From IMG/VR virus record IMGVR_UViG_3300041402_000314, positions 62,001-126,000 of that record: a stretch of 64,000 nucleotides of DNA. One strand, written 5' to 3'. The notes beneath the pieces are model-generated. The model was given only the letters and a program-made list of their open reading frames with translations. It was not told the origin of the DNA and did no database searches. Shown piece after piece: positions 13,198-50,218 of the stretch (the stretch's first letter is position 1; each line of letters begins with the position of its first letter). The translations under genes were made by a program, and so were the position numbers.

Positions 13198-13303
13198 CTC
13201 CTTATATAAGTATTAGTGGAAGGACAGCAAGCAGATGGCTCCGCTTGTTGCTAACTTATTGGTAGTAGGTTAGCTTACTTCCTATAACTATTTATATAAG
13301 GAG
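13198..13303 (-). repeat. Structured cassette, copy 1 (between an 11-aa remnant ORF and ruvC)
   Basis: Terminal IR CTCCTTATATAA/TTATATAAGGAG; internal stems GGAAG/CTTCC, CAGCAAGC/GCTTGTTG, GCTAACTTATT/AGTAGGTTAGC; homologous to 20722 and 50116. Confidence 0.85.
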
Positions 13304-13309
13304 AAATAA

Positions 13310-13855
13310 ATGATAGCTTCAATTGATGCTTCAATGAGAAGTACAGGGGTATGTGTCGTAAATGAGAAAGGAGATTTGGTAGATTTTTGTATTGTGTCTA
13401 ATAAAGACGCTACTGATTTAGAACTGTTGGAATATAATATAGAAGGGGTGATGGATTTTCTTTTGAAACATAAAGGAGATTTAACTGATATTATTATTGA
13501 GGGTCTAGCCTTTGGTGCTAAATGTAAAAGGGCTGATATATTATTTTCTAACTATTGGTTTATGCGTTATTTCATATCTAAAGAATTTGGAGATAGTGTG
13601 AATTATAATGTTTATCCAGTTACTACATGGAGAAAAACCTTTATTTCTAAAGAGAGAGCGAAAGAAGTCAAGGACAGAGGGGAAAATAAAAAAGGTTGGC
13701 AGAAAAAAGAGTGTGTGGGTCTTCTGGATGAAGAGGTTAAAGTGGCTTTTGAATTATATGTTAAGGAAAATAAATTCAAAAAAGATGCTATTTTCGATCT
13801 AACGGATTCTTTTTTACAGGGAAAACATCACGTCCTAGAAAAAACTTCTGGGTAA
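13310..13855 (+). CDS. RuvC-like Holliday junction resolvase
   Basis: IASIDASMRSTG, IIIEGLAFG, PVTTWRK, DLTDSF. Confidence 0.85.
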   Translation: MIASIDASMRSTGVCVVNEKGDLVDFCIVSNKDATDLELLEYNIEGVMDFLLKHKGDLTDIIIEGLAFGAKCKRADILFSNYWFMRYFISKEFGDSVNYNVYPVTTWRKTFISKERAKEVKDRGENKKGWQKKECVGLLDEEVKVAFELYVKENKFKKDAIFDLTDSFLQGKHHVLEKTSG

Positions 13856-14497
13856 ATTTGACATCAGAGAAACCGTTGTGTTATAATTAGAGCTTAAAAA
13901 TTGGAGGAATAAATTTATGTTGAAAGAAAGTTATGAAAAAATTATTTACGACTCTGGCATAAAGAAGATTGTATATTCTATAGGAAAAGAAGTATCTGAA
14001 GATACCGTCAGTAGATCAGTAAGAGATGATGGTGGGTTAGGTTCGCATCTCGTTATAAGATGTAATTATCTTCCAAATGATGTTTTAGAAATTATAAATA
14101 TTAATCAAACACTAGTTAAAACAGTAGAAGAAAGTACATTTGATAAGAAAGAATAATTGGAGGAATAAATTATGTTGAAAGAATTGAAAAGAGCTAAAGT
14201 AGGTGAGTTCTACGGAACGGAAATGACCACTTTAGATTCTACCTATAGTGAAGCTAAAAATGAGAGAATACAGGAAATTCTACTCGAAGGTATTGTAGGT
14301 ACTGTGATATCGGTTTTACCGCCTGATGCCACAGACCCTATTAATGTAGTTGTTGAAGATTTTGACTTCAGCGAGAAGCCTAAAAGATTCATATTCAGCT
14401 TCTATAATGAAGAGACTGGAACTGATGAAATGGTCGATACGCTCTTTGAAAAAGATTGGAAAATAGTACAGATATAAGCTAAACGTTGGAGGTTTGA

Positions 14498-15451
14498 ATG
14501 AGTGAAGAAAAGGAATTATCAATACCGTGGGTTGAGCGACATAGACCTGATGAGATAGACAATATTGTACTACCAGAAAAAACAAAGAAGGTCTTTAAAA
14601 CCCTGTTGAAAAGAGGTGGTGATAAGCTACCTAACTTTCTCTTCAGTGGGTTATCTGGTGTAGGTAAAACCACTTTAGCCAAGGCCATAATTAAAGAGTT
14701 GGGTATAACCAGCTCTCTTTATATCAATGCTTCAGATGAAAATGGTATCGATACTATCAGAACGAAAGTAAGTACATTTTGTTCCACTATGTCGGTAGAT
14801 AATGAAATAAAGATACTGATATTGGATGAGGCCGATGGTATATCCTTTCAAGGACAGAAGGCACTCAATAATATCATAGAAAGCTCTACAACTACAAGGT
14901 TTATCTTTACCTGTAACTATCCTGAGAAGATATTACCAGCGTTGAGGTCAAGGCTTAAGGAAGTAGTTTTCAGACAGTCAGATGTCAAAGATATCAGAAG
15001 ATTAATGGGTAGTATCCTGAAAGCTGAAGGAATCGATTTCTCTGATGTCGAGCAAAAAACCACATTACTCAAGATGATAGATAAATTTTATCCTGATATG
15101 AGAAAGACCATAAACCATCTTCAATATTTCTGCTCTTCTGGAGAGTTAGATATTGATCTTGATGAGGTTGTTGCTGATGATACCTACGATATCGTAATAG
15201 ATCAAATTTGTCAAGGAAAAATTATGTCGTTATGGGAAACCATGCGAAATAATAAGCTAGACTATGACGGTATCATCAAACGTATATTCCACGACTTGTT
15301 AAATAAGAAAGAACTTTTCGGAGAGGTAGAGAATACTATGCTTTCCCAAATGATACTTCTTTGTTGTGAATTCAAGGCAAAATCTAATGAAGTGGTCGAT
15401 AAAGAGATGAACTTCATGCAGTTTGCTATAGAAATAATGGAAGTGGAATAA
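14498..15451 (+). CDS. gp44-like clamp loader AAA+ subunit
   Basis: WVERHRP, GLSGVGKTT, INASDENGIDTIR, LDEAD, FIFTCNY, LRSR. Confidence 0.95.
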   Translation: MSEEKELSIPWVERHRPDEIDNIVLPEKTKKVFKTLLKRGGDKLPNFLFSGLSGVGKTTLAKAIIKELGITSSLYINASDENGIDTIRTKVSTFCSTMSVDNEIKILILDEADGISFQGQKALNNIIESSTTTRFIFTCNYPEKILPALRSRLKEVVFRQSDVKDIRRLMGSILKAEGIDFSDVEQKTTLLKMIDKFYPDMRKTINHLQYFCSSGELDIDLDEVVADDTYDIVIDQICQGKIMSLWETMRNNKLDYDGIIKRIFHDLLNKKELFGEVENTMLSQMILLCCEFKAKSNEVVDKEMNFMQFAIEIMEVE

Positions 15452-15918
15452 TGTTAGAGCTGTTCGGTATAAAGGAAAAGGAAGTAAAGGAAGAAACCTA
15501 CGTCCAACCAAAGCCTTTATCTATCTTTGATTATATAACAGATATTTGCGTGACTAAAAAGGGTAATATTCATGTTACTAGAGACCCAAATCTCAGTAAA
15601 TTTGACCCCTTTATGGTCATGCGGTTCCTGAGTTTGGATAAAGGAAACATTGTTTTCACTGGTATATTCAATCATTTTTCTTCTAGTCTAACCAAAGAAG
15701 AGCTATATAAGAGCTTGGTCATTATAATTCCTAGAGGTAAAAAGTTCTTAAAATACCCTAAACTGGTAAAGAGCATCCTTAAGGAGGAGGATGTCAAGCT
15801 ACTGAAAGACTACTTTAAGTGTTCCAGTTATGATGCCAGAGAATACCTGAATATGGGTCTAATTAAAGAAGATGATATAGAGGCTATAAAGGAAAAGTAT
15901 GGCGGAAGAGAAGGGTAA
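15451..15918 (+). CDS. gp62-like clamp loader small subunit
   Basis: FDYI..I, F.PFMV.RFLS, KFLKY, YFKCS...AREY; follows gp44. Confidence 0.85.
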   Translation: MLELFGIKEKEVKEETYVQPKPLSIFDYITDICVTKKGNIHVTRDPNLSKFDPFMVMRFLSLDKGNIVFTGIFNHFSSSLTKEELYKSLVIIIPRGKKFLKYPKLVKSILKEEDVKLLKDYFKCSSYDAREYLNMGLIKEDDIEAIKEKYGGREG

Positions 15919-16135
15919 ATGGTACACGGAATGGAAAGAATATAAAGTAGTTACATGCGCTTCATGTGGGTTTTTATATAAGAATGGTGAAAAATATTGT
16001 CATGACTGTGGTGATGATGGAGTAGATATTAGTATGGAAATATATGTCACTCCGATTAAACCAGTAAGATTCATAGAGTTAAATTTTGTAATAGATAAGG
16101 AGAATGGTGAATGTACATTTCATTCGAAGGAATAG
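15899..16135 (+). CDS. Small zinc-ribbon protein ending in a tail-sheath-like C-terminal strand
   Basis: CASC..CHDC followed by IYVTPIKPVRFIELNFVI. Confidence 0.55.
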   Translation: MAEEKGKWYTEWKEYKVVTCASCGFLYKNGEKYCHDCGDDGVDISMEIYVTPIKPVRFIELNFVIDKENGECTFHSKE

Positions 16136-16761
16136 ATGGGGCAGGTAAAAGCACTATCATGAAAAGGGTTGCGGATAGGTTAAGTTTAGATGAAAGATTA
16201 AAGGAATATGGCTATGATAAGATAGTGACATCTAGTGAGCCTAAAGGAATTTTTCGAGATATTATTCTCGATGCTGATAACAAATATGAGATTACTGAAT
16301 TGGCAAGATTCTTTCTATATCAGGCCGATAGGAGTATCCACACTGAAACCGTTATCAAACCTAACAGAGATAAGATATTGTTGGTCGATAGAGGTCCAAT
16401 AAGTACGTTGGTCTATCAGGAAGTTGCTACAGGTTTAAAGCCTCATACGATGAGGAATATAATAGAGATAGCCAATCGAGGTATTTGGCCTGATGTATAT
16501 ATCTATTTTGATATAGATTATGAGACTTCTGTTAAAAGACTTGGTGCTGAAAAAGATCACTTTGAGAAGAAAGGAAAAGACTTCTTCGATAAGCTCCTCA
16601 ATGGTTATGTGAATAGGTTGGCGGAAATGGATGACTATGGTACTAAAAAGGTTATAAAAATAGATGCTAAACGTGATGAAAATGAGGTATTTGAAGACGT
16701 TTATAAGCAAGTATTCAGATATATAATAGCATATGATCTGATAAAACAATCCGAGTTCTGA
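16111..16761 (+). CDS. tmk: Thymidylate kinase
   Basis: ISFEGIDGAGKST, EP, ADR..H, DRG..ST..YQ, PD. Confidence 0.92.
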   Translation: MYISFEGIDGAGKSTIMKRVADRLSLDERLKEYGYDKIVTSSEPKGIFRDIILDADNKYEITELARFFLYQADRSIHTETVIKPNRDKILLVDRGPISTLVYQEVATGLKPHTMRNIIEIANRGIWPDVYIYFDIDYETSVKRLGAEKDHFEKKGKDFFDKLLNGYVNRLAEMDDYGTKKVIKIDAKRDENEVFEDVYKQVFRYIIAYDLIKQSEF

Positions 16762-16771
16762 AAAGTAGCTC

Positions 16772-16815
16772 CCAACTCCTTATATAAATAGTTAAAACTA
16801 TGAATAAGGAGTTGG
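16772..16815 (+). promoter_or_regulatory. Late promoter within an RBS-sequestering hairpin (regA)
   Basis: CCAACTCCTTAT...ATAAGGAGTTGG inverted repeat with TATAAATA at 16783-16790. Confidence 0.8.
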
Positions 16816-16819: not shown

Positions 16820-17221
16820 ATGATCGAAAAAGGAATAAAAGTAGACCTTAATAAACCCTTTCCTATTGTGAGGGAAACATTAAGTCGTATAGGTATAGCT
16901 AATAGAGAAGAGAAGAAATTGTTCCCTAGCTGTTATATCTACCAAAAAGGAGAGGATTATTTTATCTCTCACTTCAAAGAACTTCTCAAAAATCCTGATA
17001 TGGATGAAGTTGATTACCAGAGACGAGATACCATTATATGGCTTCTCGAAAATTGGGAATTAATAAGTATATGTTGTGATAGTGAAGCTGAAGAGATTAA
17101 AAATAATATTCTCAAGAAAAAACTTTTCGTCTTATCGAAAGATCAGATGGAAAGAGAAGATTGGTTAATATGCCATAAATTGCACCAATATGGCATAACT
17201 CAATATAGTTCGATTGATTAA
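16820..17221 (+). CDS. regA: RegA-like translational repressor
   Basis: VRETLSRIGIAN..EKKLFPSC..., YFISHFKEL, RRDTI..LLENWELI. Confidence 0.92.
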   Translation: MIEKGIKVDLNKPFPIVRETLSRIGIANREEKKLFPSCYIYQKGEDYFISHFKELLKNPDMDEVDYQRRDTIIWLLENWELISICCDSEAEEIKNNILKKKLFVLSKDQMEREDWLICHKLHQYGITQYSSID

Positions 17222-19856: not shown

Positions 19857-20714
19857 TTAAGAAGTTAATATATCTTTAACGTCTTCTAATATGCATTCGT
19901 CAAACCATTCCGTTCTTCCACCACCCGAAGGCTGAATTTTACAATGATCTTTGAAATAATCATGGAGATAAGATTCTAATTCATCTATTTTCTTGTAAGT
20001 ATCTTTTACTAAGAAAATAGGTTTACAATCACCGAAATCTCTCGAAAGATCATGTATTCTTCTCTGTAAATTCTTTTCATTGGTGAGACCTATTTTGATG
20101 ATAGGTTTAGTTTGGTGCTGCATTAGATAAAGATAATGAGATTCTATAGAATTGTTTTCGGATAAAGATTTGAAATATTTTCTACGAGATATACTAATAT
20201 TATCTCTTCTTCTCGTCTCTAATTCGGGATTATTTTTCATAGTTTGGGTAGTTTTTTCAATTCTCTGTTTCTCTACAGTTGGATTATCCAAATAAAATTT
20301 TTTACGTTTTTCTATACGGCTGTGTATTTTTTCAGGATTATCTCAAAAAATTTGTTTAATTTTCTCTGTCCTATTTTTGACTTTTTCGAGATTATCTTTA
20401 CACCATAGTTTATATTTTTCTACTTTCTTTTGTGTAATGGAAGGATTATCTTCGAGAGTTTTTCTATAAGATTTTATTTGCTTATCTTTCACTATTCTAT
20501 TATTATTTGAACATTTACTAGAACAATGATTGGCATAACCATATGTTAAGTTGAAAAATTTTGTCTCTTTACCACAAGAACAAATTCCCTCTCGTTCGGC
20601 TTTAAAGAATATATCATAATAGTCTTTTGGTATTAGATTATGTTTTCTCTTAATATGATGGCCTAAAATTTTAAATTGTTGATTACAGATTTGACAGGTG
20701 AGAATTTTTGACAT
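19857..20714 (-). pseudogene. Homing-endonuclease-like gene (Zn fingers + DNP repeats + T5orf172/GIY-YIG-type domain) interrupted by one in-frame TGA
   Basis: ORFs 20343..20792 and 19857..20291 share a frame, separated only by TGA at 20343-20345; C-terminal YLYLM..IKIGLT..RR...LESYLH..GRTEWF. Confidence 0.8.
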
Positions 20715-20721
20715 GATATAG

Positions 20722-20819
20722 CTCCTTATAAATAGTTGTGGAAGGACAGCAAGTAGATAGCTCCACTTGTTTTGGATTGAGGTGAGAGTCAATCCAATTA
20801 CTTCCTATAATTATTTATA
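20722..20819 (-). repeat. Structured cassette, copy 2 (leader of the T5orf172-type gene)
   Basis: Same architecture as 13198; TATAAATA inward-facing at both ends; hairpins AGCAAGT/ACTTGTT and TTGGATTGA/TCAATCCAA. Confidence 0.85.
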
Positions 20820-20834
20820 CATTCTAAAAAGAAC

Positions 20835-20863: not shown

Positions 20864-20893
20864 ATGTTAATTAAAAAGTTGAGGAGAACAACT

Positions 20894-22735
20894 ATGAATA
20901 CTGAAAGGATCGAAGAACTAGAAAGAGAAATAGAAAAACACAATCATTTATATTGGGAGAAAAATGAACCTATCATAAATGATGAAAGTTATGATGTATT
21001 ACTCCAAGAGCTACTGACAATATACCCAGATAGTCATATCTTCACTACCTTAGAGGAACAGAAATCTATCGAACCCCAAAATAAGTATGTACATTCAGAC
21101 CCTATGCTGTCCCTTGAGAAATTCTATAGCGTAAAAGAAGTCATTACATGGATGAAGAAGATAGGTAGATCACCCCACGAACTCTTCAAAATGGAACTCA
21201 AACTCGATGGTATTTCTGGTCGCCTAGAGAATGGTAATCTTGCGACTAGGGGAGATGGTCGAGTCGGTGAGAATCATACATCTAAAATTCCTTTCATAGA
21301 ATTCAAGGTAGCTTCAGATAAAACAATCTGTGAAACTGTTGATTGTACTATCAATGGTGAGATCATTATAACGGATAAGTTCTTTGAAGATAATCTTAAG
21401 GGAGAATTCAAGAATTCGAGAAATGCTGTTGCTGGTCTGATGGGTAGAAAGCGTCCTGAAGAGATCGAAGGAATGGGAGTTACTTTCGTTGATTTTGATT
21501 ATGATAAAATCCAACATACAGGAAATGTCGATGCCTTTGAAATCGGATGGGATGATCTGGTAAAAAATCTTACTTCAAAGGGATTTCCTTTTGATGGTAT
21601 CGTAATCAAATTGGCTGATACTGACTACTACAAGCTGTTGGGCAATAAAACCAAAAGTCCTAGAGGTGCTATAGCGTTTAAGTTCGCTAATAAGAAGGGA
21701 ATTACCCCTGCTACAGAGATTACAGCCCAAGTAAGTAGGAAGGGTAAGCTTACTCCTGTTGCCGAACTAGAGCCTATTGAGTTGGCTGGTGTTACGATAT
21801 CCAGAGCTACGTGTCATAATTTTAAGTTCGTTAAGGACATGGGCATAGGAAAAGGTTCTGTTGTTGTAATTGAAAGAGCAGGAGATGTGATACCAAAAAT
21901 CACGAGCGTTGTCAAAGGTAAAATTGATGATGTTATATTCCCAACAAATTGTCCCTGTTGTGACACACCAACTGAATTTAATGGTGTAGACCTATGTTGC
22001 CCTAACACTACATGCCCAGACCGTCTGATAGAGCATCTGGCTTTCATGGCTAAAACCATTGGTATCGATGAGCTTGGCAGACCGACTGCCGAGAAAATAT
22101 ATAATTATTATGTGGAATCCACTCATAATAAAACAAATATTTTTAGATTAAATTCCATATCATATGAAGATATTCTTTCTTTAGAAGGGTATGGTGAGAA
22201 GAGTGCTAAGACACTTTATGGTAATATCCAGAACGCATTGAAAAATATCAATGAAATAGATTTTTTGGCTTCTTTTGGTATATCTGGATGGGGTAAGACT
22301 ATGGCAGACAAAGCCCTTACCAAAGCTGGTAGCCTAGATAATCTTCTCAAAATGAATAAAGAAGAATTGACTTCTATTGAAGGAATCGGAGAAATAATGG
22401 CCGAAAATCTAATAAATGGCGTTAAAGAACAATGTATACGATTAGTTCATGCTGATTATACTACCTTCATTGTCGAACCTACCAAAGAACACAATAACAT
22501 AGTAGATGGACAACACGAAAACATAGTAAAGTATACAATCTGTTTCACTGGTAAATTAGAAAATCCGAGGAAATTCTATGAAAATATTGCTAAAGAAAGA
22601 GGGATGAAACCTACTTCTTCTGTAAATAAAGACTTGAACATATTGATTACTGCTGATAAGAACAGCGTATCCAGTAAAATGAAAAAAGCTGAAAAATTAG
22701 GTATAGAGATTTTATCTTTAGAGGAATGGCTATAA
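20894..22735 (+). CDS. ligA: NAD-dependent DNA ligase
   Basis: HNHLY...D..YD, PMLSLEK, KLDG, TRGDGRVGE, RNAVAG, DGIVIK, AIAFKF, RAGDVIP, Zn finger, HhH, BRCT. Confidence 0.96.
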   Translation: MNTERIEELEREIEKHNHLYWEKNEPIINDESYDVLLQELLTIYPDSHIFTTLEEQKSIEPQNKYVHSDPMLSLEKFYSVKEVITWMKKIGRSPHELFKMELKLDGISGRLENGNLATRGDGRVGENHTSKIPFIEFKVASDKTICETVDCTINGEIIITDKFFEDNLKGEFKNSRNAVAGLMGRKRPEEIEGMGVTFVDFDYDKIQHTGNVDAFEIGWDDLVKNLTSKGFPFDGIVIKLADTDYYKLLGNKTKSPRGAIAFKFANKKGITPATEITAQVSRKGKLTPVAELEPIELAGVTISRATCHNFKFVKDMGIGKGSVVVIERAGDVIPKITSVVKGKIDDVIFPTNCPCCDTPTEFNGVDLCCPNTTCPDRLIEHLAFMAKTIGIDELGRPTAEKIYNYYVESTHNKTNIFRLNSISYEDILSLEGYGEKSAKTLYGNIQNALKNINEIDFLASFGISGWGKTMADKALTKAGSLDNLLKMNKEELTSIEGIGEIMAENLINGVKEQCIRLVHADYTTFIVEPTKEHNNIVDGQHENIVKYTICFTGKLENPRKFYENIAKERGMKPTSSVNKDLNILITADKNSVSSKMKKAEKLGIEILSLEEWL

Positions 22736-26664: not shown

Positions 26665-26781
26665 GGGAGAGTGGCGAAATTGGTAAACGCATCCTTATTA
26701 GGTCTGATACTCTTGCTGATAAGTTAGGACTGAACAGGATGGTGAGCAAGCACTTTGTAGGTTCGATTCCTACCTCTCCCA
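26665..26781 (+). tRNA. tRNA-Leu(UAG)-like gene with ~31-nt insertion in the anticodon loop; CCA not encoded
   Basis: Acceptor GGGAGAG/CTCTCCC + A73; Leu-type D arm GGCGAAATTGGTAAACGC; long variable arm; T arm GTAGG-TTCGATT-CCTAC; ATCCT/AGGAT encloses 40 nt. Confidence 0.7.
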
Positions 26782-32177: not shown

Positions 32178-33860
32178 ATGGCTAAATATACAGTAAGAGG
32201 AAAGGGAGAAACGACCTTAACCGATAGAAATTTCATCACTGAAGGCGGTGAGGGGAAAGTCTATGGGAAAGGCTCTACTATATACAAAATATATAGCGAT
32301 ATCAATAAGATGATACCAGAAGCCAAGATAAAGGAACTCGAAGTATTGACTTCGCCCAATATAATGAATCCTCAGAATGTCATACTAGATCAGAAATCTC
32401 GTATGGTTGGATTCACTATGGATAGGATAGACAACTCTCTGCCTATATGTAAACTGTTTACTACTGACTTCAGGAATAGAAATAATATAACGCCTGAGAT
32501 CATAGTCGATCTTGTAGATAATATACAAGAGACATTGAATTCCATACACGAAAAGAAAATAATATGCGTGGATTTAAACGAATTAAATTATCTGGTCAAG
32601 GAAAACGACTTTAAGACACCTTATTTTATAGATGTCGATTCGTACCAGACACCTAATTTTCCTGCTACTGCGATAATGCCTAACATAAGGGATTATAATA
32701 CGAATGGATTTAATCGCTTGACAGACTGGTATAGTTTCGCTATAATAGCTTTTCAGTTGTTCATTGGCATACATCCTTTTAAAGGTAAGAATCCTAATTT
32801 CAAGAAGAATAGCCTCATAGAGCGCATGAAACAGAATGTTAGTGTCTTTGATAAGGATACGAGGGTTCCTGCCTCTACAAGGGATTTTAGCCACATTCCT
32901 AGCCATTATATGGCGTGGTTCGAAAGGCTATTCCAGAAAGGTGAGAGATTAGAGCCACCTTCTATAGCTGGACTGCTTAATGTAATGCAGGTTCAAACAG
33001 AAATAATAGATAGTACGGATAACTTTATAATAAAATTTCTCCGAGACTATAAGAATCCTGTTACCAGTTATTTCAATTTTAGTGGTACTGATGGAACCAC
33101 CACTACGAAGGAAGGTTATATAGGCAAGGTAGGATATGATATCGATAACGCCAATTCGGTTCTGGTATTCGGTGAAAAATTCCTTACACCAATAATAGCG
33201 ACTGTAACGGATGAAAAATTAGTCTTGACAAACCTGAAGACAAATGTTATAATCCCTAATGTATTCATAAACGCTAAGAAAATAACTAAGGTAGGGAATA
33301 AGTTATTTGTATATCAGGGCGAGAAGTTCTTGGAAGTAGGTATAGTTGAAATGAATGGTAAGGTACTGGCGAACGTAGCTAAGACCTACAATGTTATGCC
33401 TAACTCCACTCAGGTATTTGATGGGTTCCTTTATAGCACTATGTTGGAGAAACCATATCTGATGATACCTCAGAATGGTAATTTCGTTCCTGTTCCAGTA
33501 AAAGAGCTGGAGAAATACAAGATCATAGACGGTAAATTTGAGAACGGTGTCTGTGTGATAACAGCATATAAAGATGGTGGCTATGATCGGTTTACCTTTG
33601 TCTTCGAGGGAGTTAATTATACCTTCAGGAAAGATGAGGATGTAGCTGGAAAATCGGTTAACTTCACTGTTCTAAGCAATGGAATAGTCGTTAGTATAAC
33701 TGATGATGGAACTATGGAGATATTTAAGAATGATAGTAGCCATAATAAGATGAAGGTTATACATGACCCTGCTATCAGTTCCGATATGAAACTCTGTAAT
33801 AACGGCCTCGAAGTATTATTCTATCGAGGCAATGAAATGTACTCTTTAAAGATGAAGTGA
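32178..33860 (+). CDS. Ser/Thr protein kinase-like protein with a beta-rich C-terminal domain
   Basis: GGEGKVY, IYKIY, DLNELNYLV, IDVDSYQ, TDWYSFA...GIHPFKG. Confidence 0.88.
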   Translation: MAKYTVRGKGETTLTDRNFITEGGEGKVYGKGSTIYKIYSDINKMIPEAKIKELEVLTSPNIMNPQNVILDQKSRMVGFTMDRIDNSLPICKLFTTDFRNRNNITPEIIVDLVDNIQETLNSIHEKKIICVDLNELNYLVKENDFKTPYFIDVDSYQTPNFPATAIMPNIRDYNTNGFNRLTDWYSFAIIAFQLFIGIHPFKGKNPNFKKNSLIERMKQNVSVFDKDTRVPASTRDFSHIPSHYMAWFERLFQKGERLEPPSIAGLLNVMQVQTEIIDSTDNFIIKFLRDYKNPVTSYFNFSGTDGTTTTKEGYIGKVGYDIDNANSVLVFGEKFLTPIIATVTDEKLVLTNLKTNVIIPNVFINAKKITKVGNKLFVYQGEKFLEVGIVEMNGKVLANVAKTYNVMPNSTQVFDGFLYSTMLEKPYLMIPQNGNFVPVPVKELEKYKIIDGKFENGVCVITAYKDGGYDRFTFVFEGVNYTFRKDEDVAGKSVNFTVLSNGIVVSITDDGTMEIFKNDSSHNKMKVIHDPAISSDMKLCNNGLEVLFYRGNEMYSLKMK

Positions 33861-45054: not shown

Positions 45055-46713
45055 ATGAGTTGGTTAGATAAATTAAGAGGTAAGGATGTCTTAGAAGAAA
45101 ATCCTAAGATCATTAAGTCCTTTGAACAGACTAAGGATAAGCAAGAAGAGAAAGAAGAAAATGACATCGAGAAAATGGGAGCTACTGAATTTGAAATGTT
45201 CGGTAGTATGGAGTATTACTATAATTCTATTTATGGTACGACTTCCGATAAAGTAAGGCTTGCCAAAGAATATAGAGAAATGGCTATGTTCCCAGAAGTT
45301 GCGGATGCATTAGATGAAATCTGTGATGAGGCTATTGTCCCTGATGATGAAGGTGAAATCCTTAGTCTGCGTTTCGATGATGAAACCTTACAGAAAAATA
45401 AAAACAAAGTTAAAAATCTCCAGAAGGAATTTGACTTTGTAATCAACAAACTACTCAGTTTCAATGATGATGGATTTAATCTCTTCAGAAAATTCTATGT
45501 AGAGGGTGAGCTTTATGGTGAGATGGTTATTAATCCGAAGTCTCCTAAACAGGGTATTAAGAAGATCGTATTTCTGCCTCCCGAAACAATAACTCCAGAA
45601 TATGATGAATATAATAACATCAAAGGATTTATTCAGAAAGTGGAGGGCGGTCACAAAAATGGTAATGATGCGCTTATTAAATTTAGTTCTGAGCAGATTT
45701 CTTATGTGAATTCAGGTATTTTCAGTACCGATAAAAGAGTTCCGTTAAGCTTTATTGAAAGAGCTAAAGTAGCTTATCGACAATTGAAGTGGATGGAAGA
45801 CGCTCTTATTATATATAGAATAGTTCGTGCGCCAGAAAGAAGAGTCTTCACTGTTGATGTTGGTAATCTTCCAAAGAAGAAAGCTGAAGAATACATGAAC
45901 AATATCATTAAACGATATAAGCAGAAGAAAATCTATAATCCTCAGACAGGTGAAATCGATGTAGGTAAGCAAGTTTTGTCTATGATCGAAGACTTCTGGT
46001 TGCCTAAAAGAGCCGATGGTTCTGGTCCGTCCGTAGAAACCTTAGATGGAGGTTCAAATCTTGGAGAGATAGATGACGTTATCTATTTCGTTAAGAAGCT
46101 CTATAAGGCTCTTAAAATCCCTACAAAGCGTATGGATGAAGAGAGTAGTGGTGGTGTTTATCAGCCAAACGGAAAATCTGGTGAAATCGATAGGGATGAG
46201 ATCAAATTTGCTAAGTATGTCGTAAGGGTAAGACAAAGGTTTATTAAGTTCCTGACTCAGATTTTCGTAAAGCATCTTCAACTTACTGGCCTATGGAAGC
46301 AATATAAGCTCGATGAAGACATGTTCTCTTTCATATTCAATGAAGAAAATGAATGGAGAGAAACCAAGAAGCTTGAGAACTTTAGGGAAAGACTTGATAT
46401 CTTCCGTGAAGCTAAAGATCATTCATCTGACCCTGAGAAAGCTATTTACGCTATTGAATGGTTACAGAAAGAAATTCTCAAGATGTCTGATGAAGATATT
46501 GAAGAAAATAGAAAACTAATTGAGAAGGATAGAAAGGAAAAGGAAGAAACTGAAGATAAATGGGGTGCTGGTGATGAGCCAGAAGAAACTGACGGAGATG
46601 CGGATGGTGGCGGTAAGCCTCCAAAGAAGGAGCCTGAAGTAGAGCCAGAAGCGGAGCCTGAAGATGGAGATGAGGAAGAACCAGAAGAAGAAAGTACGGT
46701 TTTAAATACGTAA
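45055..46713 (+). CDS. gp20-like portal protein
   Basis: YREMA..PEV..A..EI..EAI, MEDALIIYRIVRAPERRVFTVDVGNLPKKKAEEY, EDFWLP.R, RDEIKF.K. Confidence 0.97.
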   Translation: MSWLDKLRGKDVLEENPKIIKSFEQTKDKQEEKEENDIEKMGATEFEMFGSMEYYYNSIYGTTSDKVRLAKEYREMAMFPEVADALDEICDEAIVPDDEGEILSLRFDDETLQKNKNKVKNLQKEFDFVINKLLSFNDDGFNLFRKFYVEGELYGEMVINPKSPKQGIKKIVFLPPETITPEYDEYNNIKGFIQKVEGGHKNGNDALIKFSSEQISYVNSGIFSTDKRVPLSFIERAKVAYRQLKWMEDALIIYRIVRAPERRVFTVDVGNLPKKKAEEYMNNIIKRYKQKKIYNPQTGEIDVGKQVLSMIEDFWLPKRADGSGPSVETLDGGSNLGEIDDVIYFVKKLYKALKIPTKRMDEESSGGVYQPNGKSGEIDRDEIKFAKYVVRVRQRFIKFLTQIFVKHLQLTGLWKQYKLDEDMFSFIFNEENEWRETKKLENFRERLDIFREAKDHSSDPEKAIYAIEWLQKEILKMSDEDIEENRKLIEKDRKEKEETEDKWGAGDEPEETDGDADGGGKPPKKEPEVEPEAEPEDGDEEEPEEESTVLNT

Positions 46714-46759
46714 GATATAAATAATTAAAATATTAATAAGATTTAAGGAGAAATATATT

Positions 46760-46930
46760 ATGGGTATGAAAGAATTGATAGACGGAATTAATGACGATAA
46801 CTTTTCAGATGCTAGAGACGAACTTAAGACATATGTTCAAGATAACATCACAAGTAGAGTTAGTGTTAAACAAGAAGAGCTTGGTTTAGTTATCCCTGTT
46901 GAAGAAGGCGATGCTGGCGAGGAAGACTAA
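46760..46930 (+). CDS. Probable gp67-like prohead core protein (56 aa, absent from the ORF track)
   Basis: Late promoter and AAGGAG RBS; MGMKELIDGINDDNFSDARDELK...acidic tail; lies directly after the portal. Confidence 0.65.
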   Translation: MGMKELIDGINDDNFSDARDELKTYVQDNITSRVSVKQEELGLVIPVEEGDAGEED

Positions 46931-47239: not shown

Positions 47240-47250
47240 GGGAGACTAAG

Positions 47251-47928
47251 ATGAATCAACATCCATTAGTATTTTTAAGGGAAGAATTTGATTTTCAAAA
47301 CTTCGATAATATTATTGAAGAAGGTAAAGACGGTAAGGAAAAGACATATTGGGTTGTCGGTCCTACTATTGTATCTGAAGCAGAAAACAAGAATGGTAGA
47401 AAATACCAGAAGAGTGTCTGTGAAAGAGAAGTAGAAAGGTTCCAAAAAACAATAGATGAGAATAGGTCTGCTGGTGAACTTGGACATCCGAGTACACCAG
47501 AAATTAATCTCGAAAGAATATCTCATTACATCAAAGAGTTAAAGCAAGATGGAAATATTTGGATAGGTAAGCATCAAGTAGCTTCTACTCCAATGGGAAA
47601 CATCGCTAAAGCTCTCATTAATGATGGATATAAAATGGGTATTTCTACAAGAGGTCTTGGAACAGTTAAGGACGGAGTAGTAGGCGAGGATTTTAGATTG
47701 ATTACTGCCGACCTAGTTTCTGAGCCTTCTGGTCCCGGATGTTTTGTTGAATCTATTGTAGAAAATAAGCAATGGATTATAGACGAGTCTGGGAAAATCA
47801 AAGAAGTAGCGATGGAAGAAGCTTATGATGATCTTGAAGAAAAACTATGCGATTTGCCTAAACATGATATTGAAAAATTCATGATGGAAGCTATCTCATC
47901 ATTTGTTTCTAAAATTCAAAAAGCGTAA
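47251..47928 (+). CDS. gp21-like prohead protease
   Basis: NKNGRKY, GELGHP, INLERISH, TPMGNI, GISTRGLG, DLVSEPS. Confidence 0.95.
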   Translation: MNQHPLVFLREEFDFQNFDNIIEEGKDGKEKTYWVVGPTIVSEAENKNGRKYQKSVCEREVERFQKTIDENRSAGELGHPSTPEINLERISHYIKELKQDGNIWIGKHQVASTPMGNIAKALINDGYKMGISTRGLGTVKDGVVGEDFRLITADLVSEPSGPGCFVESIVENKQWIIDESGKIKEVAMEEAYDDLEEKLCDLPKHDIEKFMMEAISSFVSKIQKA

Positions 47929-47953
47929 AAAAATCACGATATATAAATAATTA
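47927..47953 (+). promoter_or_regulatory. Late promoter, 27-bp copy A
   Basis: AAAAAAATCACGATATATAAATAATTA, identical to 48784-48810. Confidence 0.85.
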
Positions 47954-47996
47954 AAATAACATAGTAAAATAGTCACAAGGAGATTAAGGAGATAAT

Positions 47997-48782
47997 ATGA
48001 ATCCACTAGAAAAATTAATCGAGTTTATTGAAAAAGAAGGAAAGGTTGAACTTTCTGAAGGTTTCAAATCTAAGCTTGAGGACGCTATCAAGGTAGCAAC
48101 TGTAGACAAGGAAACTGAGATTGAAGGTCTTAAGGAAATAATGAAGGAAGCTAAAGCTGAGATCGAATCTGGTAGAAGCGAACTTCAAGCTCTTAAGGAA
48201 GGCACTCTGGAAGATGCGAAGAAGGCTATAGAAGAGTATAAGGAATCTCTTACTGAGAAGATTTCTAGTTATCTTGAGTCTGAACTACAAAATCTCATTC
48301 CTGAGAATCTTGTAGAAGCTCAAGCTAAAGTAGAAGCTTATGAGCCTATCGTAGAAAAAGTTAAGGGCATATTCAAAGGTTATGGAGTTGAAATCGATTC
48401 TGAAGCTCATGATGTTCTTAAGGAAGCTAAAGAAGAAATTCTTGGACTCCAGAAAAGCTATGACACTATCGTAGCTGACAAACTTAAGCTTGAAGAGAAG
48501 ACTGCCGAGCTTCTTGCTAAGTATGTATTGAAGGAAAAGTGTGACGGTCTTACTGAAGCACAAGTCACTAAAATCAATGTTATCTTCAAAGGAAGTGATG
48601 TTGAAGAAATCGAAGAGAAATTTGAGTCTGTAGCTGATCTTATTATCTCTGATGGTTCTTCTGCTAGTGATGGTGATAGTGTTGATGGTGCTGGTTCTGG
48701 TTCTGATTTTATTGACGAATCTGCTGGTTCTGCTGCTATAATCGAAGAGGATGTTAACTCCCTCGGACAAGACCTTCTTTAA
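47997..48782 (+). CDS. gp22-like prohead scaffolding protein
   Basis: Acidic coiled coil, LSEGFK, KISSYL, GLTEAQ; between gp21 and gp23. Confidence 0.85.
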   Translation: MNPLEKLIEFIEKEGKVELSEGFKSKLEDAIKVATVDKETEIEGLKEIMKEAKAEIESGRSELQALKEGTLEDAKKAIEEYKESLTEKISSYLESELQNLIPENLVEAQAKVEAYEPIVEKVKGIFKGYGVEIDSEAHDVLKEAKEEILGLQKSYDTIVADKLKLEEKTAELLAKYVLKEKCDGLTEAQVTKINVIFKGSDVEEIEEKFESVADLIISDGSSASDGDSVDGAGSGSDFIDESAGSAAIIEEDVNSLGQDLL

Positions 48783-48783
48783 G

Positions 48784-48810
48784 AAAAAAATCACGATATA
48801 TAAATAATTA
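48784..48810 (+). promoter_or_regulatory. Late promoter, 27-bp copy B
   Basis: Identical to 47927-47953; upstream of the MCP. Confidence 0.85.
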
Positions 48811-48859
48811 CAAAAGATATAATAAACAATTACAAAAGGAGCTTTAAGGAGATAATAAT

Positions 48860-50002
48860 ATGATAACTGAAAATGTAGATCAATTAATTGAAAAATGGGA
48901 TGGAAAGGGTTTCAAGGTAAGCGAAATCTCTGACCAGCTAGTTAGAGAGAACACTGCAAAGATTCTCGAAAATGAGCATAGATATATACTAGAAGCGAGT
49001 TCTACTTTGTCAACAGACATAGCGGACTTCAAGAAGATCATCATGCCTCTTACGAGAAGAATCTTCCCGAATCTTATCGCTAATGATCTTGTAGGTGTAC
49101 AGCCTATGAGCGGTCCTGTTGGACTTGCATACGCACTTAGGTTCAAAGCTGGTAACGCTGAGACTAACTATAACAGTGGTACGCAACAGGAAGTAGGTTA
49201 TAACACTGTTGATAAAGACTACTCTGGTTCTGTTCTTACGTCTGCTGGTGAAAGATGGGGTTCTACTGACCCAACTAAGACCAAGGAAATTCCAGAAGCA
49301 CAAATGAGCATCGAGCAGGTTTCTATCGAAGCAAAGACCAGAAAGTTGAGAGCAAGGTACTCTCTCGAATCTGCACAAGACCTTAGAAACGTTCATGGTC
49401 TTAATGTAGAAGCTGAGATGACTAACATGCTTCAATACGAAATCTCTGCTGAAATTGATAGAGAGCTTGTAGACAGAATTAACACTCTTGCTGATACTAA
49501 CTCTTCCGACTATGTTGTTAGTGCTGGTGACGGTCAGTGGGAAGCTGAGAAGTTCAGAAATCTTTACACAAGAATCGTTAAAGAAGCATCCGCAATCGCT
49601 ACTAGAACTAGAAGAGGTGCTGGTAACTTCATCATATGTTCTTCTAACGTAGTAACTGCGCTTGACTCTCTTAACAACTTCTTGATTCAGCCAACAAGTT
49701 CTGGCCCAATGAATCTTTCTCCGGGTGTTGCAAAAGTAGGTAGCATCGAGAACAGATTCACCGTATACAGAGATACTTTCGCTACAAGCGACTATATCAC
49801 TGTAGGTTACAAAGGTCCGGGTGCTGCTAACAGCGGTGTTGTTTACTGTCCTTACGTACCGATCATGATCAGCAAAGCAACTGAAGAAGGTTCTTTCTAT
49901 CCGATCATCGGTGTTATGACGCGATATGGCGTAGTAGATCATCTTTTTGGCGGAAGCGATTTTTACAGCAAAATTAACGTTGATTTTACAAACGTTTTTT
50001 AA
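48860..50002 (+). CDS. gp23-like major capsid protein (compact, 380 aa)
   Basis: RRIFPNLIANDLVGVQPMSGPVGL, AKTRKLRA.YS.E.AQDL..VHG, EIDRE, TRRGAGNF, YCPYVP, MTRYG. Confidence 0.97.
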   Translation: MITENVDQLIEKWDGKGFKVSEISDQLVRENTAKILENEHRYILEASSTLSTDIADFKKIIMPLTRRIFPNLIANDLVGVQPMSGPVGLAYALRFKAGNAETNYNSGTQQEVGYNTVDKDYSGSVLTSAGERWGSTDPTKTKEIPEAQMSIEQVSIEAKTRKLRARYSLESAQDLRNVHGLNVEAEMTNMLQYEISAEIDRELVDRINTLADTNSSDYVVSAGDGQWEAEKFRNLYTRIVKEASAIATRTRRGAGNFIICSSNVVTALDSLNNFLIQPTSSGPMNLSPGVAKVGSIENRFTVYRDTFATSDYITVGYKGPGAANSGVVYCPYVPIMISKATEEGSFYPIIGVMTRYGVVDHLFGGSDFYSKINVDFTNVF

Positions 50003-50026
50003 GATAACCTAAAGTAACACATTAAC

Positions 50027-50060
50027 AAAAAGGGCTACTCGATTTGAGTAGCCCTTTTTT
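50027..50060 (+). terminator. Intrinsic terminator after the MCP
   Basis: AAAAAGGGCTACTC-GATTT-GAGTAGCCCTTTTTT. Confidence 0.9.
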
Positions 50061-50115
50061 ATTGTCCAAAATTTGACTTTTATCTATAGTCTGTGTTATA
50101 CTATAAAATCTTAAA

Positions 50116-50218
50116 TATATAAATAATTAAAAGAGAGTTAGCTAACTTACGGGAATAGGTTAGCAACAGGTGGAGTAAGTTACCTGATGTCCTCTCTCAC
50201 ATCTATTTATATAAGGAG
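50116..50218 (+). repeat. Structured cassette, copy 3 (leader of the GIY-YIG gene)
   Basis: TATAAATA..AGAGAG, GCTAAC/GTTAGC, CAGGT-GGAG-/ACCTG, TGTC-CTCTCT..TATTTATATAAGGAG; matches the reverse complement of copies 1 and 2. Confidence 0.85.

What the first reader, a model, noticed from the sequence alone, without database searches (positions are those of the whole stretch)
13198..50218. Three-copy covarying ~100-nt structured cassette with convergent late promoters, always next to a nuclease gene
Seen: copies at 13198-13303 (-), 20722-20819 (-) and 50116-50218 (+) share one layout. In order: TATAAATA, purine arm, hairpin A, AACA(A/G)G(C/T)-GGAG-loop hairpin B, TGTC, pyrimidine arm, TA(T/C)TTATA, AAGGAG, ATG. 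Stems differ in sequence but keep pairing: outer GGAAG/CTTCC vs AGAGAG/CTCTCT; B CAAGC/GCTTG vs CAAGT/ACTTG vs CAGGT/ACCTG; A GCTAAC/GTTAGC vs TTGGATTGA/TCAATCCAA. This is covariation of a three-way junction. Each end is a late-promoter-like octamer facing inward. Copy 2 leads a T5orf172-type nuclease and copy 3 a different, LEM-3-like GIY-YIG nuclease. Copy 1 leads an 11-aa remnant (13190-13155, MSNELTTQSHI) and, in the other direction, supplies the RBS of the RuvC-like resolvase. Known: T4 I-TevI and gene 49 use simple RBS-occluding hairpins. Inference: this is a more elaborate, portable RNA module that controls toxic nucleases (protein-binding leader, sense/antisense pair or nuclease-associated RNA). 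The conserved loop GGAG could be a CsrA-type site.
Basis: partly seen in the sequence, partly recalled or inferred. Interest (0 to 1): 0.88.

Follow-up and report, generated by a model that had tools for sequence, protein, structure and literature searches.

The report
Structured control cassette of phage homing endonucleases
A roughly 110-base folded RNA module with inward-facing late-promoter boxes at both ends sits in front of selfish nuclease (homing endonuclease) genes in a group of uncultured T4-like phages. One of its hairpins copies each gene's own ribosome-binding site, which points to a built-in, probably antisense, brake on nuclease production.

Summary
The three copies align (83% column identity) and fold alike, and they belong to a family of at least 33 distinct sequences in viral and metagenome contigs. 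The window's own 204-kb phage has at least six copies. The three-way junction (P1, hairpin A, hairpin B) has strong compensatory covariation: 95.5% of cells are paired, 26 of 30 pairs changed on both sides, and the score is 0.57 against at most 0.09 for slid controls.

Nothing in Rfam 15 matches. Neither do 50,697 cultured-phage records or 185,579 species genomes.

Thirty of the 31 downstream ORFs that could be assessed are homing-endonuclease-like, from at least five nuclease families. Copy 1 is a relic that lost its nuclease, so its RuvC neighbour is incidental.

Both ends carry T4-type late-promoter boxes 5-7 nt from the base of P1, facing inward. The box is perfect on the sense side in 14 of 33 and on the antisense side in 17 of 33.

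New here: the bases after the invariant GGAG of hairpin B equal those after the GGAG of the nuclease's Shine-Dalgarno (SD) in the same cassette. Two bases match in 33 of 33 and four or more in 21 of 33.

General SD occlusion by the outer stem is not supported, and a CsrA site is untested.

The kind is known (late-promoter hairpins of T4-type endonuclease genes), but this family and its SD mimic are new.

The parts
13186..13300 (-). Copy 1 of the module, a relic. Sense box TATAAATA 13289-13296; P1 13278-13282 / 13218-13222; hairpin A 13250-13274; hairpin B 13228-13247 with GGAG at 13239-13242; SD AAGGAG 13198-13203; ATG 13188-13190.
   Evidence: Read; fold (z -5.3); model hit of 130.5 bits.
13155..13190 (-). 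11-codon remnant ORF (MSNELTTQSHI) where the endonuclease gene should be. It runs straight into the 3' end of the GNAT gene (12639-13154, +).
   Evidence: Only here and in one other member (L006:6934-7050) is the SD-spacer match with hairpin B broken at the third base after GGAG by an A-to-G difference (CCAU vs CCGU).
13205..13212 (+). Imperfect inward-facing box TATAAGTA of copy 1 (7 of 8 matches).
13298..13855 (+). RuvC-like resolvase gene (ATG at 13310) with its SD AAGGAG at 13298-13303. The SD abuts the complement of the sense box, so its translation start mirrors the 3' end of the module (TATTTATAT-AAGGAG-N6-ATG). It is a divergent neighbour, not a controlled nuclease.
   Evidence: phrog_159; antisense echo of 34.8 bits.
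20710..20823 (-). Copy 2 of the module. Sense box 20812-20819; P1 20801-20805 / 20740-20744; hairpin A 20772-20797; hairpin B 20750-20769 with GGAG at 20761-20764; SD 20722-20727; ATG 20712-20714.
   Evidence: 124.3 bits.
20727..20734 (+). Perfect inward-facing TATAAATA of copy 2. It points through the module towards the NAD-dependent ligase gene (20864-22735, +).
   Evidence: The predicted antisense RNA folds as a mirror three-way junction.
19857..20714 (-). Homing-endonuclease-like gene of copy 2. Zn-finger N-terminal part (20343-20714) and T5orf172 C-terminal part (19857-20291) lie in one frame, broken by a single TGA at 20343-20345.
50027..50059 (.). Hairpin terminator after the major capsid gene, with T-runs on both strands. 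It would also end an antisense RNA started in copy 3.
   Evidence: -21.7 and -22.3 kcal/mol, z about -6.6 on both strands. The consensus scan did not list it.
50073..50102 (+). Sigma-70-like promoter (TTGACT, 18 nt, TG-n-TATACT) just upstream of copy 3. Its transcripts would include the 5' arm of the outer stem. It is not conserved in other members.
50114..50230 (+). Copy 3 of the module. Sense box 50118-50125; P1 50132-50137 / 50192-50197; hairpin A 50141-50164; hairpin B 50167-50186 with GGAG at 50172-50175; SD 50213-50218; ATG 50226-50228.
   Evidence: 112.9 bits.
50204..50211 (-). Perfect inward-facing TATAAATA of copy 3.
   Evidence: In the predicted antisense RNA, hairpin B' has a 10-nt open loop that contains CUUACUCC, the complement of the SD plus spacer GGAGUAAG.
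50226..51266 (+). GIY-YIG (LEM-3-like) plus NUMOD3 homing endonuclease gene, directly after the major capsid gene. It is followed by its own terminator at 51265-51286.

Best explanation
What it is (high confidence, about 0.9). The module is the conserved 5' control region of free-standing homing endonuclease gene cassettes in a clade of uncultured, deeply branching T4-like phages. It travels with, and is swapped among, unrelated endonuclease genes: GIY-YIG, an endo VII/HNH-like Zn-ribbon type, DUF7487, a T5orf172/CapR type and HNH.

The layout is: late-promoter box; 5-7 nt; P1; hairpin A; AA; hairpin B (invariant CA..GGAG with a G.U pair and a GNNA-like loop); NUGUC; P1'; 5-7 nt; complement of a late-promoter box; AAGGAG; about 7 nt; start codon.

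How it most likely works (inferred, about 0.4).
- Both boxes are T4-type late promoters that fire towards each other.
- The sense transcript starts at the foot of P1. The endonuclease mRNA therefore begins with the folded three-way junction, followed by an unstructured A/U-rich ribosome-binding site.
- The antisense transcript starts at the other foot of P1 and folds into the mirror-image junction.
- In that mirror, hairpin B' exposes AU-N'N'-CUCC. This is an anti-SD loop that matches the SD plus spacer of its own cassette.
- That loop pairs with the endonuclease mRNA and keeps translation of the nuclease low. It may also create an RNase III substrate.
- Most cassettes sit head-to-head with a phage gene. 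There the antisense promoter and mirror leader would also restart late expression of the gene that the insertion cut off from its own promoter.

Shown: the family, the structure, the exclusive endonuclease association, the box symmetry, the SD mimic and the orientation bias. Inferred: promoter activity on both strands, the transcription start sites, the existence of the antisense RNA and its pairing with the SD.
For: - Family and structure: 33 distinct members; 95.5% of cells paired; 26 of 30 pairs changed on both sides; covariation 0.573 against 0.044-0.091 when partners are slid; 0 of 500 shuffles reach the observed value. A model-independent alignment recovers P1, A and B.
- Specificity: 38 chance matches to the search pattern in bacterial and archaeal genomes give no model hit.
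- Endonuclease association.
- Late-promoter identity of TATAAATA in this phage: it is enriched and lies upstream of the portal, scaffold, capsid, gp2-like and adaptor genes.
- Symmetry: a perfect box in 14 of 33 on the sense side and 17 of 33 on the antisense side. Both lie 5-7 nt from P1, in 19 and 24 of 33 members.
- SD mimic: the two bases after GGAG are identical at hairpin B and at the SD in 33 of 33 members. Three or more match in 28 of 33 and four or more in 21 of 33, across 9 dinucleotide types and about 17 four-mers. Permutation gives 0 of 20,000. One member has GAGGCAAAU at both sites.
- No complement of the 8-mer exists on the sense strand within 400 nt either side. The antisense strand of hairpin B is therefore the only matching partner encoded in cis.
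- The invariant G.U of hairpin B becomes an A.C mismatch in the mirror hairpin, which opens its loop.
- Outside that site, A.C cells (17) outnumber G.U cells (8) on the sense strand.
- The upstream neighbour is divergent in 19 of 27 cases.
- Precedent: an antisense RNA over a homing endonuclease gene in the T4-like cyanophage S-PM2 (Millard et al. 2010, seen only as an entry in the reference list of PMC10690425; the paper itself was not read).
Against: - No transcript data exist. Promoter activity, start sites and the antisense RNA are all inferred from sequence.
- Two inward-facing identical boxes are complementary by construction. The outer stem and the convergent promoters therefore cannot be told apart. 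One member (L023) carries the same deviant box, TAAGTA, on both arms, which favours a stem.
- The sense-strand core is predicted to be more stable than the mirror in 23 of 33 members.
- The wobble asymmetry (17 against 8) is weak, and the counts are not independent.
- An antisense RNA is in any case fully complementary to the sense leader, so the need for a separate anti-SD loop rests on a kinetic argument only.
- Where hairpin B and the SD spacer differ, only 3-4 of about 13 differences would be wobble-compatible. I tallied this by eye from the output.
- In members whose boxes are reduced to NNTAAATA, promoter strength is unknown.
Confidence: 0.45

Rival explanations
1. Sense-only leader working by the classical T4 logic. 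Longer, earlier transcripts include the 5' arm, so the outer stem forms next to the ribosome-binding site and translation is poor. Late transcripts start inside the stem at the foot of P1 and are translated. The three-way junction acts as a 5'-terminal stabiliser, and hairpin B acts as an SD-like standby or decoy site for the 30S subunit.
For: - The late box lies in the 5' arm, 5-7 nt from P1.
- Copies 1 and 2 do show SD occlusion in the long form: 0.00 and 0.05 unpaired, against 0.52 and 0.45 in the late form.
- Copy 3 has a sigma-70-like promoter just upstream of the outer stem.
- The sense core is the more stable strand in 23 of 33 members.
- Precedents are I-TevI, segB and mobE. A hairpin that abuts but does not cover the RBS is known for seg43(25) (PMC2988022).
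Against: - Across the first 21 members (A4) the SD is no less accessible in the long form (0.40 against 0.41).
- The upstream neighbour is divergent in 19 of 27 cases, so read-through from upstream genes is not available. No upstream promoter is conserved.
- A ribosome or protein decoy does not read the two variable bases, so the covarying SD mimic is left unexplained.
- G.U pairs are rarer than expected for a structure selected on one strand only.
Confidence: 0.3
2. Operator for a trans-acting RNA-binding protein that binds hairpin B and the SD region together. Candidates are host CsrA (GGA in a hairpin plus GGA in the SD), the phage's own RegA-like repressor, or a RegB-like GGAG-specific nuclease.
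For: - Two invariant GGAG sites lie about 41 nt apart, and the junction bases AACA and UGUCC are invariant.
- The phage encodes a RegA homologue at 16820-17221 (phrog_242, E = 4e-27).
- T4 RegB cuts GGAG in translation-start regions (PMC3014915).
Against: - Cassettes in one genome carry different bases after GGAG yet always match their own SD. One protein would not demand that.
- The GGA of hairpin B is paired in most members. CsrA, from my own knowledge, and RegB, per PMC3014915, both prefer it unpaired.
- RegA sites are unstructured, A/U-rich and overlap the AUG (PMC3014915).
- The host is unknown.
Confidence: 0.12
3. A DNA-level module. The conserved 110 bp serves mainly as a recombination handle that shuffles endonuclease genes between sites, as PeSL cassettes do, or as a branched DNA structure. 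The RNA fold would be incidental.
For: - The same module fronts at least five unrelated nuclease families, with several copies per genome.
- A relic copy exists without a gene.
- G.U and A.C mismatches are about equally tolerated, as expected if both strands matter.
- PeSL is a precedent (PMC2839356, PMC4122927).
Against: - A recombination handle needs sequence identity, not pairing. Here the stems change sequence while keeping pairing (all 9 pairs of hairpin A and 4 of 5 pairs of P1 covary).
- The orientation and spacing relative to the SD and start codon are fixed.
- The SD mimic concerns translation signals.
Confidence: 0.08

Closest known systems
Late-promoter/RBS hairpins of T-even homing endonuclease genes (I-TevI, I-TevII, I-TevIII, segB; mobE of phage Aeh1), as reviewed in PMC2988022
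   Same: A T4-type late promoter (TATAAATA) sits in the 5' arm of an RNA structure immediately upstream of a homing endonuclease start codon. Late transcripts would lack that arm. The purpose is tight, late expression of a nuclease.
   Different: Those are single hairpins that cover the SD, each specific to its own gene, on endonuclease genes co-transcribed with their neighbours. This one is a conserved family: an outer stem plus a covarying three-way junction. It is shared by unrelated endonucleases, mostly inserted opposite to their neighbours, has a second inward-facing box and an SD mimic, and shows no general SD occlusion.
5' UTR hairpins of GIY-YIG and Vsr-like endonuclease genes in metagenomic 'fractured gene' loci (Dassa et al. 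2009, PMC2677866)
   Same: Uncultured T4-like phage loci. Hairpins lie upstream of free-standing endonuclease genes of different families. TATAAATA lies inside 10 of them, and two conserved motifs face each other on the stem. One locus lost the endonuclease but kept the hairpin, as copy 1 did.
   Different: They were described as hairpins from single-sequence folds and MEME motifs. No three-way junction, covariation analysis, antisense box or SD mimic was reported. The figures and supplement are not held, so I could not check whether any of those loci belong to this family.
seg43(25) hairpin of Aeromonas phage 25 (PMC2988022)
   Same: A stable structure ends immediately upstream of the RBS without covering it.
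   Different: It is a single case. No family, promoter symmetry or mimic was described.
PeSL mobile regulatory cassettes of T4-type phages (PMC2839356, PMC4122927)
   Same: Short conserved promoter-plus-stem-loop modules, repeated within T4-like genomes and linked to modular gene shuffling.
   Different: PeSLs combine an early promoter with a terminator-like stem-loop and flank small ORFs of hyperplastic regions. This module has late-type boxes and a three-way junction, and it is tied to endonuclease translation starts.
IS10 RNA-IN/RNA-OUT and similar cis-antisense control of mobile-element nucleases (from my own knowledge). Also the antisense RNA over the endonuclease gene of cyanophage S-PM2 (Millard et al. 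2010, seen only as a reference-list entry in PMC10690425; not read).
   Same: Convergent promoters at the 5' end of a mobile element's nuclease gene. A structured antisense RNA whose loop can pair with the ribosome-binding site.
   Different: In IS10 the antisense RNA overlaps the ribosome-binding site itself. Here the predicted antisense RNA would start downstream of the SD and could reach it only through a duplicated, covarying copy in hairpin B. No transcript has been shown.

Membership tests
Any Rfam 15 family | Covariance-model match at or near the curated gathering score | tested here: not met
   A whole-window scan finds only a tRNA. Permissive scans of copies 1 and 3 give only chance hits at E of 0.9 or more, far below the gathering scores.
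T4-type late-promoter/RBS-sequestering hairpin (I-TevI, segB, mobE) | Late promoter TATAAATA inside the 5' arm of a structure just upstream of the endonuclease start | tested here: met
   NNTAAATA lies 5-7 nt before P1 in most members and is a perfect TATAAATA in 14 of 33. The octamer marks late genes in this phage.
T4-type late-promoter/RBS-sequestering hairpin (I-TevI, segB, mobE) | The structure sequesters the SD in transcripts that include the 5' arm | tested here: not met
   Mean predicted unpaired probability of the SD is 0.40 in the long form and 0.41 in the late form. Only copies 1 and 2 show occlusion.
T4-type late-promoter/RBS-sequestering hairpin (I-TevI, segB, mobE) | The endonuclease gene lies on read-through transcripts of co-oriented upstream genes | tested here: not met
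   The upstream neighbour is divergent in 19 of 27 assessable members.
T4-type late-promoter/RBS-sequestering hairpin (I-TevI, segB, mobE) | Mapped late transcription start inside the structure | not testable with these tools
   No transcript data are available.
Metagenomic endonuclease 5' UTR hairpins of Dassa et al. 2009 | Hairpin with TATAAATA and two facing conserved motifs upstream of free-standing GIY-YIG or Vsr-like genes | tested here: inconclusive
   The description fits the outer stem and boxes. Their sequences and figures are not held, so identity of the families could not be checked. No Vsr-like gene was seen among the downstream ORFs here.
PeSL cassette | Early (sigma-70-type) promoter followed by a terminator-like stem-loop, flanking ORF cassettes | tested here: not met
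   A sigma-70-like promoter is found only upstream of copy 3 and is not conserved. The structure is a three-way junction with no T-run.
CsrA-type binding site pair | GGA exposed in a hairpin loop, plus a second GGA in the SD within bridging distance | tested here: inconclusive
   Two GGA sites lie about 41 nt apart. However, the hairpin-B GGA can pair with UCU/UYU in about two thirds of members. Whether the host has CsrA is unknown.
RegB cleavage site | GGAG with unpaired GGA and an A-rich 3' context (GGAGRAYARAA; PMC3014915) | tested here: not met
   The hairpin-B GGA is mostly paired and is followed by NNAU(C/U)U. No regB gene was looked for.
Cis-antisense control of a mobile-element nuclease (IS10-like) | Convergent promoters, and an antisense loop complementary to the ribosome-binding site | tested here: met
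   The antisense box is perfect in 17 of 33 and lies 5-7 nt from P1' in 24 of 33. The mirror hairpin-B loop complements GGAGNN in 33 of 33 members and 8 nt in 21 of 33. This is sequence-level evidence only.
Cis-antisense control of a mobile-element nuclease (IS10-like) | The antisense transcript exists and represses translation | not testable with these tools
   This needs strand-specific RNA mapping and reporter assays.

The most novel reading that the evidence does not exclude
A self-contained, bidirectional control module that homing endonuclease genes carry with them. Two convergent late promoters share one structured leader. The antisense product displays a cassette-specific anti-SD loop, kept matched to its own SD by coevolution. 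That loop throttles the nuclease, while the same antisense transcript re-supplies late expression to the phage gene the insertion displaced. This would be a new design principle for how selfish nuclease genes make themselves harmless to their phage, and a new class of phage cis-antisense regulator.
Probability: 0.33. Interest if true: 0.82.

Novelty: new variant of a known kind. Interest (0 to 1): 0.66.

Why it matters
Homing endonuclease genes are the commonest selfish elements of large phages. How they stay harmless to the phage has been worked out only gene by gene in T4.

This module is a single conserved RNA that is reused by at least five unrelated nuclease families across an uncultured phage clade, and its covariation is strong enough to define an RNA family.

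It offers three things:
- a sequence marker for endonuclease cassettes, and relics of them, in metagenomes;
- a directly testable model of nuclease control, through the SD mimic, the convergent late promoters and mutation pairs that are easy to design;
- a compact natural part that combines promoter, leader and translational control on both strands.

It also shows that direct-repeat covariation, not only inverted-repeat covariation, can reveal regulatory RNA logic.

Tried and rejected
- **Known RNA families.** Rfam at gathering and permissive thresholds gives nothing. A hammerhead reading was rejected by eye: CUGAUGA is not conserved, since copy 1 has UGCUGUCC. No self-cleaving ribozyme family matched in the Rfam scans.
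- **Cultured relatives.** Megablast of 10 kb of the window and blastn of two module copies against 50,697 phage records find no match. The capsid protein is only about 36% identical to its nearest cultured relatives.
- **Cellular genomes.** There are 38 pattern matches and none passes the model.
- **General SD occlusion by the outer stem.** Not supported.
- **A partner for GGAGNNNN on the sense strand.** No complement with one mismatch or fewer lies within 400 nt either side. G.U-tolerant matches were not searched.
- **A leader peptide starting 8 nt after the hairpin-B GGAG.** By eye on A6, the codon there is mostly CUG, UUG in a minority, and an AUG follows in only four members. The frames and stops differ between the copies I read through, so I rejected it as a conserved feature.
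- **A gene-60-like take-off and landing pair.** Rejected, because no ORF reads into the module.
- **Using the wobble-pair balance to choose the functional strand.** The result is weak (8 G.U against 17 A.C outside the invariant site). It also conflicts with the folding energies, where the sense strand is more stable in 23 of 33 members.
- **Matching the box variant (CTAAATA or TATAAATA) to each phage's own late promoter.** The loci are too short to decide.
- **A conserved sigma-70 promoter upstream of the module.** Found only at copy 3.
- **Dassa et al. sequences.** Not available for comparison.

Full report
**1. The observation**

The three copies are present as described: 13186-13300 (-), 20710-20823 (-) and 50114-50230 (+). 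They align with 83% mean column identity. Each folds alone into the same architecture: an A/U outer stem (P0), a 5-6 bp stem P1, hairpin A and hairpin B. The z-scores are -5.3, -2.9 and -3.4 against dinucleotide shuffles. A covariance model built from the three copies (R1), run over the whole window with filters off, finds only these three (113-130 bits). It also gives weak antisense echoes, which reflect the symmetric layout.

**2. The genome**

The window is part of a 204-kb uncultured viral contig, IMGVR_UViG_3300041402_000314. Three fetched loci reproduce the three copies with identical scores.

The phage is T4-like. It has a gp23-type major capsid protein (48860-50002), a gp20-type portal (45055-46713), a prohead protease, a scaffold, a gp2-like end protector, a head-tail adaptor and a RegA-like translational repressor. 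It is far from anything cultured. The capsid protein is about 36% identical to those of Pelagibacter phage HTVC008M and Stenotrophomonas phages, and there is no nucleotide match in 50,697 phage records.

TATAAATA occurs 26 times against 12.8 expected. It lies 20-60 nt upstream of the gp2-like, portal, scaffold, capsid, adaptor and regA-like genes. It is therefore very likely this phage's T4-type late promoter. That step rests on established T4 biology plus position; it is not shown by transcripts.

**3. A family, not three repeats**

I ran two degenerate-pattern scans of viral contigs and one of metagenome contigs. Each was filtered with the covariance models R1 and R2. Together they give 33 distinct sequences (alignment A6). 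The window's own genome has at least three further copies outside the window: L011:1380-1497, L006:6934-7050 and L006:11767-11894.

The same pattern matched 38 places in one-genome-per-species bacterial and archaeal assemblies, and none passed the model. The family therefore looks phage-restricted, and the model is specific. Rfam 15 has no matching family.

**4. Structure**

- On A6, 95.5% of pair cells are standard pairs, against 70.8% when shuffled.
- 26 of 30 pairs show changes on both sides.
- The covariation score is 0.573, against 0.044-0.091 when partners are slid by 1-3 columns, and 0 of 500 shuffles reach it (the 21-sequence set gives the same picture).
- All nine pairs of hairpin A covary, as do four of the five pairs of P1.
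- A MAFFT alignment made without the model, folded with RNAalifold, independently recovers P1, A and B. All 16 of its predicted pairs carry compensatory changes. It does not recover P0.

Invariant or nearly invariant single-stranded or sequence-fixed positions are:
- G-U-A/U-A after P1;
- AA-CA at the foot of hairpin B;
- GGAG in hairpin B, with a G.U pair in 30 of 33;
- N-UGUC-C before P1';
- U-AAGGAG, then about 7 nt, then the start codon.

**5. What follows the module**

The ORFs that start 6-9 nt after the AAGGAG were extracted and scanned.

| Downstream ORF type | Count |
|---|---|
| GIY-YIG, mostly with NUMOD3 | 10 |
| Zn-ribbon 'endonuclease VII'/HNH-like (phrog_1035) | 12-13 |
| DUF7487/phrog_3339 'homing endonuclease' | 3 |
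| phrog_559/681 (T5orf172/CapR type; one has an HNH C-terminus) | 3 |
| HNH (phrog_655) | 1 |
| No match (L133) | 1 |
| Relic of 11 codons (copy 1) | 1 |
| Lost at a contig edge | 1 |

Retrieval was by the RNA pattern alone, so this association is not built in.

The RuvC-like resolvase beside copy 1 is the divergent upstream neighbour, and other members have ligase or unrelated genes in that position. Copy 1 is best read as a cassette that lost its endonuclease. Dassa et al. saw the same thing in one of their loci (PMC2677866).

Copy 2's endonuclease is one 285-codon frame with a single in-frame TGA.

**6. Promoter boxes and orientation**

The 5' arm of P0 carries NNTAAATA. It is a perfect TATAAATA in 14 of 33 members and lies 5-7 nt from P1 in 19 of 33.

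The 3' arm, read on the other strand, also carries the box. It is perfect in 17 of 33 and lies 5-7 nt from P1' in 24 of 33. With T4 spacing, both transcripts would begin at the foot of P1.

Two inward-facing identical boxes are complementary by construction, so the P0 helix and the convergent promoters cannot be separated by covariation. One member (L023) has the same deviant TAAGTA on both arms, which favours pairing.

The cassettes are mostly inserted against the flow of neighbouring genes. The upstream neighbour is divergent in 19 of 27 assessable cases, and the downstream neighbour lies on the opposite strand in 15 of 20. In copy 1 and L006:11767 the divergent gene's SD lies 1-4 nt from the box. 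Its translation start therefore mirrors the module's 3' end.

**7. SD occlusion tested**

For the 21 members of the first alignment (A4) I compared two forms. One is a long form with 30 nt upstream of the box. The other is a late form that starts 6 nt after the box. The mean predicted unpaired probability of the AAGGAG is 0.40 in the long form and 0.41 in the late form. Only copies 1 and 2 show occlusion. The classical 'hairpin covers the RBS' mechanism therefore does not generalise. The layout is closer to the seg43(25) case, where the hairpin ends just before the RBS (PMC2988022).

**8. A new feature: the SD mimic**

In every member the two bases after the hairpin-B GGAG equal the two bases after the SD GGAG of the same cassette (33 of 33, nine dinucleotide types). 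Three or more bases agree in 28 of 33 and four or more in 21 of 33.

Pairing hairpin B of one cassette with the SD of another gives far fewer matches (mean 1.8 of 4 against 3.3 of 4). Permutation gives 0 of 20,000. One divergent member has GAGGCAAAU at both sites. My search patterns left these positions free.

Direct-repeat covariation of this kind normally means that both sites pair with a common partner. No complement exists on the sense strand within 400 nt either side. Cassettes in one genome differ, which argues against a single protein or a single trans RNA.

The only matching sequence encoded in cis is the antisense strand of hairpin B. In the mirror fold the invariant G.U becomes an A.C mismatch. 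The anti-SD 8-mer then lies in an open or weakly closed loop. In copy 3 it is a 10-nt loop containing CUUACUCC, opposite the SD region GGAGUAAG.

**9. Which strand?**

For the sense strand:
- the fixed orientation relative to the endonuclease start;
- the invariant G.U pair;
- a more stable sense core in 23 of 33 members.

For a role of the antisense strand:
- the at least equally well conserved antisense box;
- the SD mimic;
- fewer G.U (8) than A.C (17) cells outside the invariant site.

The last point is weak. I conclude that both strands are probably transcribed, and I rank the antisense model first at moderate confidence.

**10. Copy 3 as a worked example**

In order along the + strand:
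- the capsid gene;
- a bidirectional terminator at 50027-50059;
- a sigma-70-like promoter at 50073-50102;
- the module;
- the GIY-YIG gene;
- its terminator at 51265-51286.

An antisense RNA started about 6 nt past the box at 50204-50211 would run some 170 nt to the bidirectional terminator. The position after gene 23 recalls T4 segD, which lies between genes 23 and 24 and is antisense to its neighbours (PMC2988022).

**11. Comparison with what is known, and novelty**

The kind is known. It covers late promoters inside regulatory hairpins upstream of T4-type homing endonuclease genes (PMC2988022), and hairpins with TATAAATA and facing conserved motifs upstream of GIY-YIG and Vsr-like genes in metagenomic phage loci (PMC2677866).

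I did not find the following described in the papers I could search or in Rfam:
- a covarying three-way-junction family shared by five nuclease families;
- the conserved inward-facing second box;
- the opposite-strand insertion bias;
- the covarying SD mimic.

I therefore rate it a new variant of a known kind.

**Limits**

- Members were found through two sequence patterns that fix AACA, GGAG, TGTCC and AAGGAG, so more divergent members are missed and the invariance of those bases is partly ascertained.
- The pair counts on A4 and A6 come from model-fitted alignments, although A7 is independent.
- Neighbour orientation comes from a crude ORF call.
- No transcript evidence exists.

Noticed in passing
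window 26665-26781 (+): Rfam tRNA match (44 bits) spanning 117 nt. The acceptor, D and T arms are good, but 46 nt replace the 13-nt anticodon-arm segment and there is a long extra stretch. ARAGORN calls no tRNA anywhere in the window. It could be an intron-bearing or otherwise interrupted phage tRNA.
   Followed up: partly
window 16820-17221 (+), box at 16783-16790: RegA-like translational repressor (phrog_242, E = 4e-27), preceded by a TATAAATA box. It shows that this distant T4-like phage keeps T4-style translational control proteins.
   Followed up: no
window 20343-20345 (-): A single in-frame TGA splits the copy 2 endonuclease ORF. It follows a run of six T's (CAA ATT TTT TGA GAT). This could be a pseudogene, read-through or a sequencing error in a homopolymer.
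   Followed up: partly
window 20864-22735 (+) and 32178-33860 (+): The phage has an NAD-dependent (bacterial-type) DNA ligase with OB, HhH and BRCT domains, where T4 uses an ATP-dependent ligase. It also has a 560-aa protein with a weak Ser/Thr protein kinase domain.
   Followed up: no
L007:686-3824 and L090:4806-6531; also L025: Several contigs carry two modules close together, fronting different endonuclease families. L007 has phrog_1035-type and DUF7487-type genes either side of a 386-aa gene. L090 has an HNH-type gene behind one copy (5401-5507). Its other copy (6422-6531) has the same model score as L025:631-740, which fronts a GIY-YIG gene, but its own downstream ORF was not scanned. This is consistent with swapping of the module between cassettes.
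   Followed up: partly
L001, L004, L005, L010, L012, L015 (one group); L028, L034, L045, L054, L059, L070 (another): Model hits with identical bit scores and lengths, which collapse to one distinct sequence per group, recur in six different viral contigs from different samples. This implies very recent spread or closely related phages.
   Followed up: no
window 50027-50059: A clear 9-bp G+C-rich hairpin with T-runs on both strands follows the capsid gene. The terminator consensus scan did not list it, although folding gives about -22 kcal/mol on either strand.
   Followed up: yes
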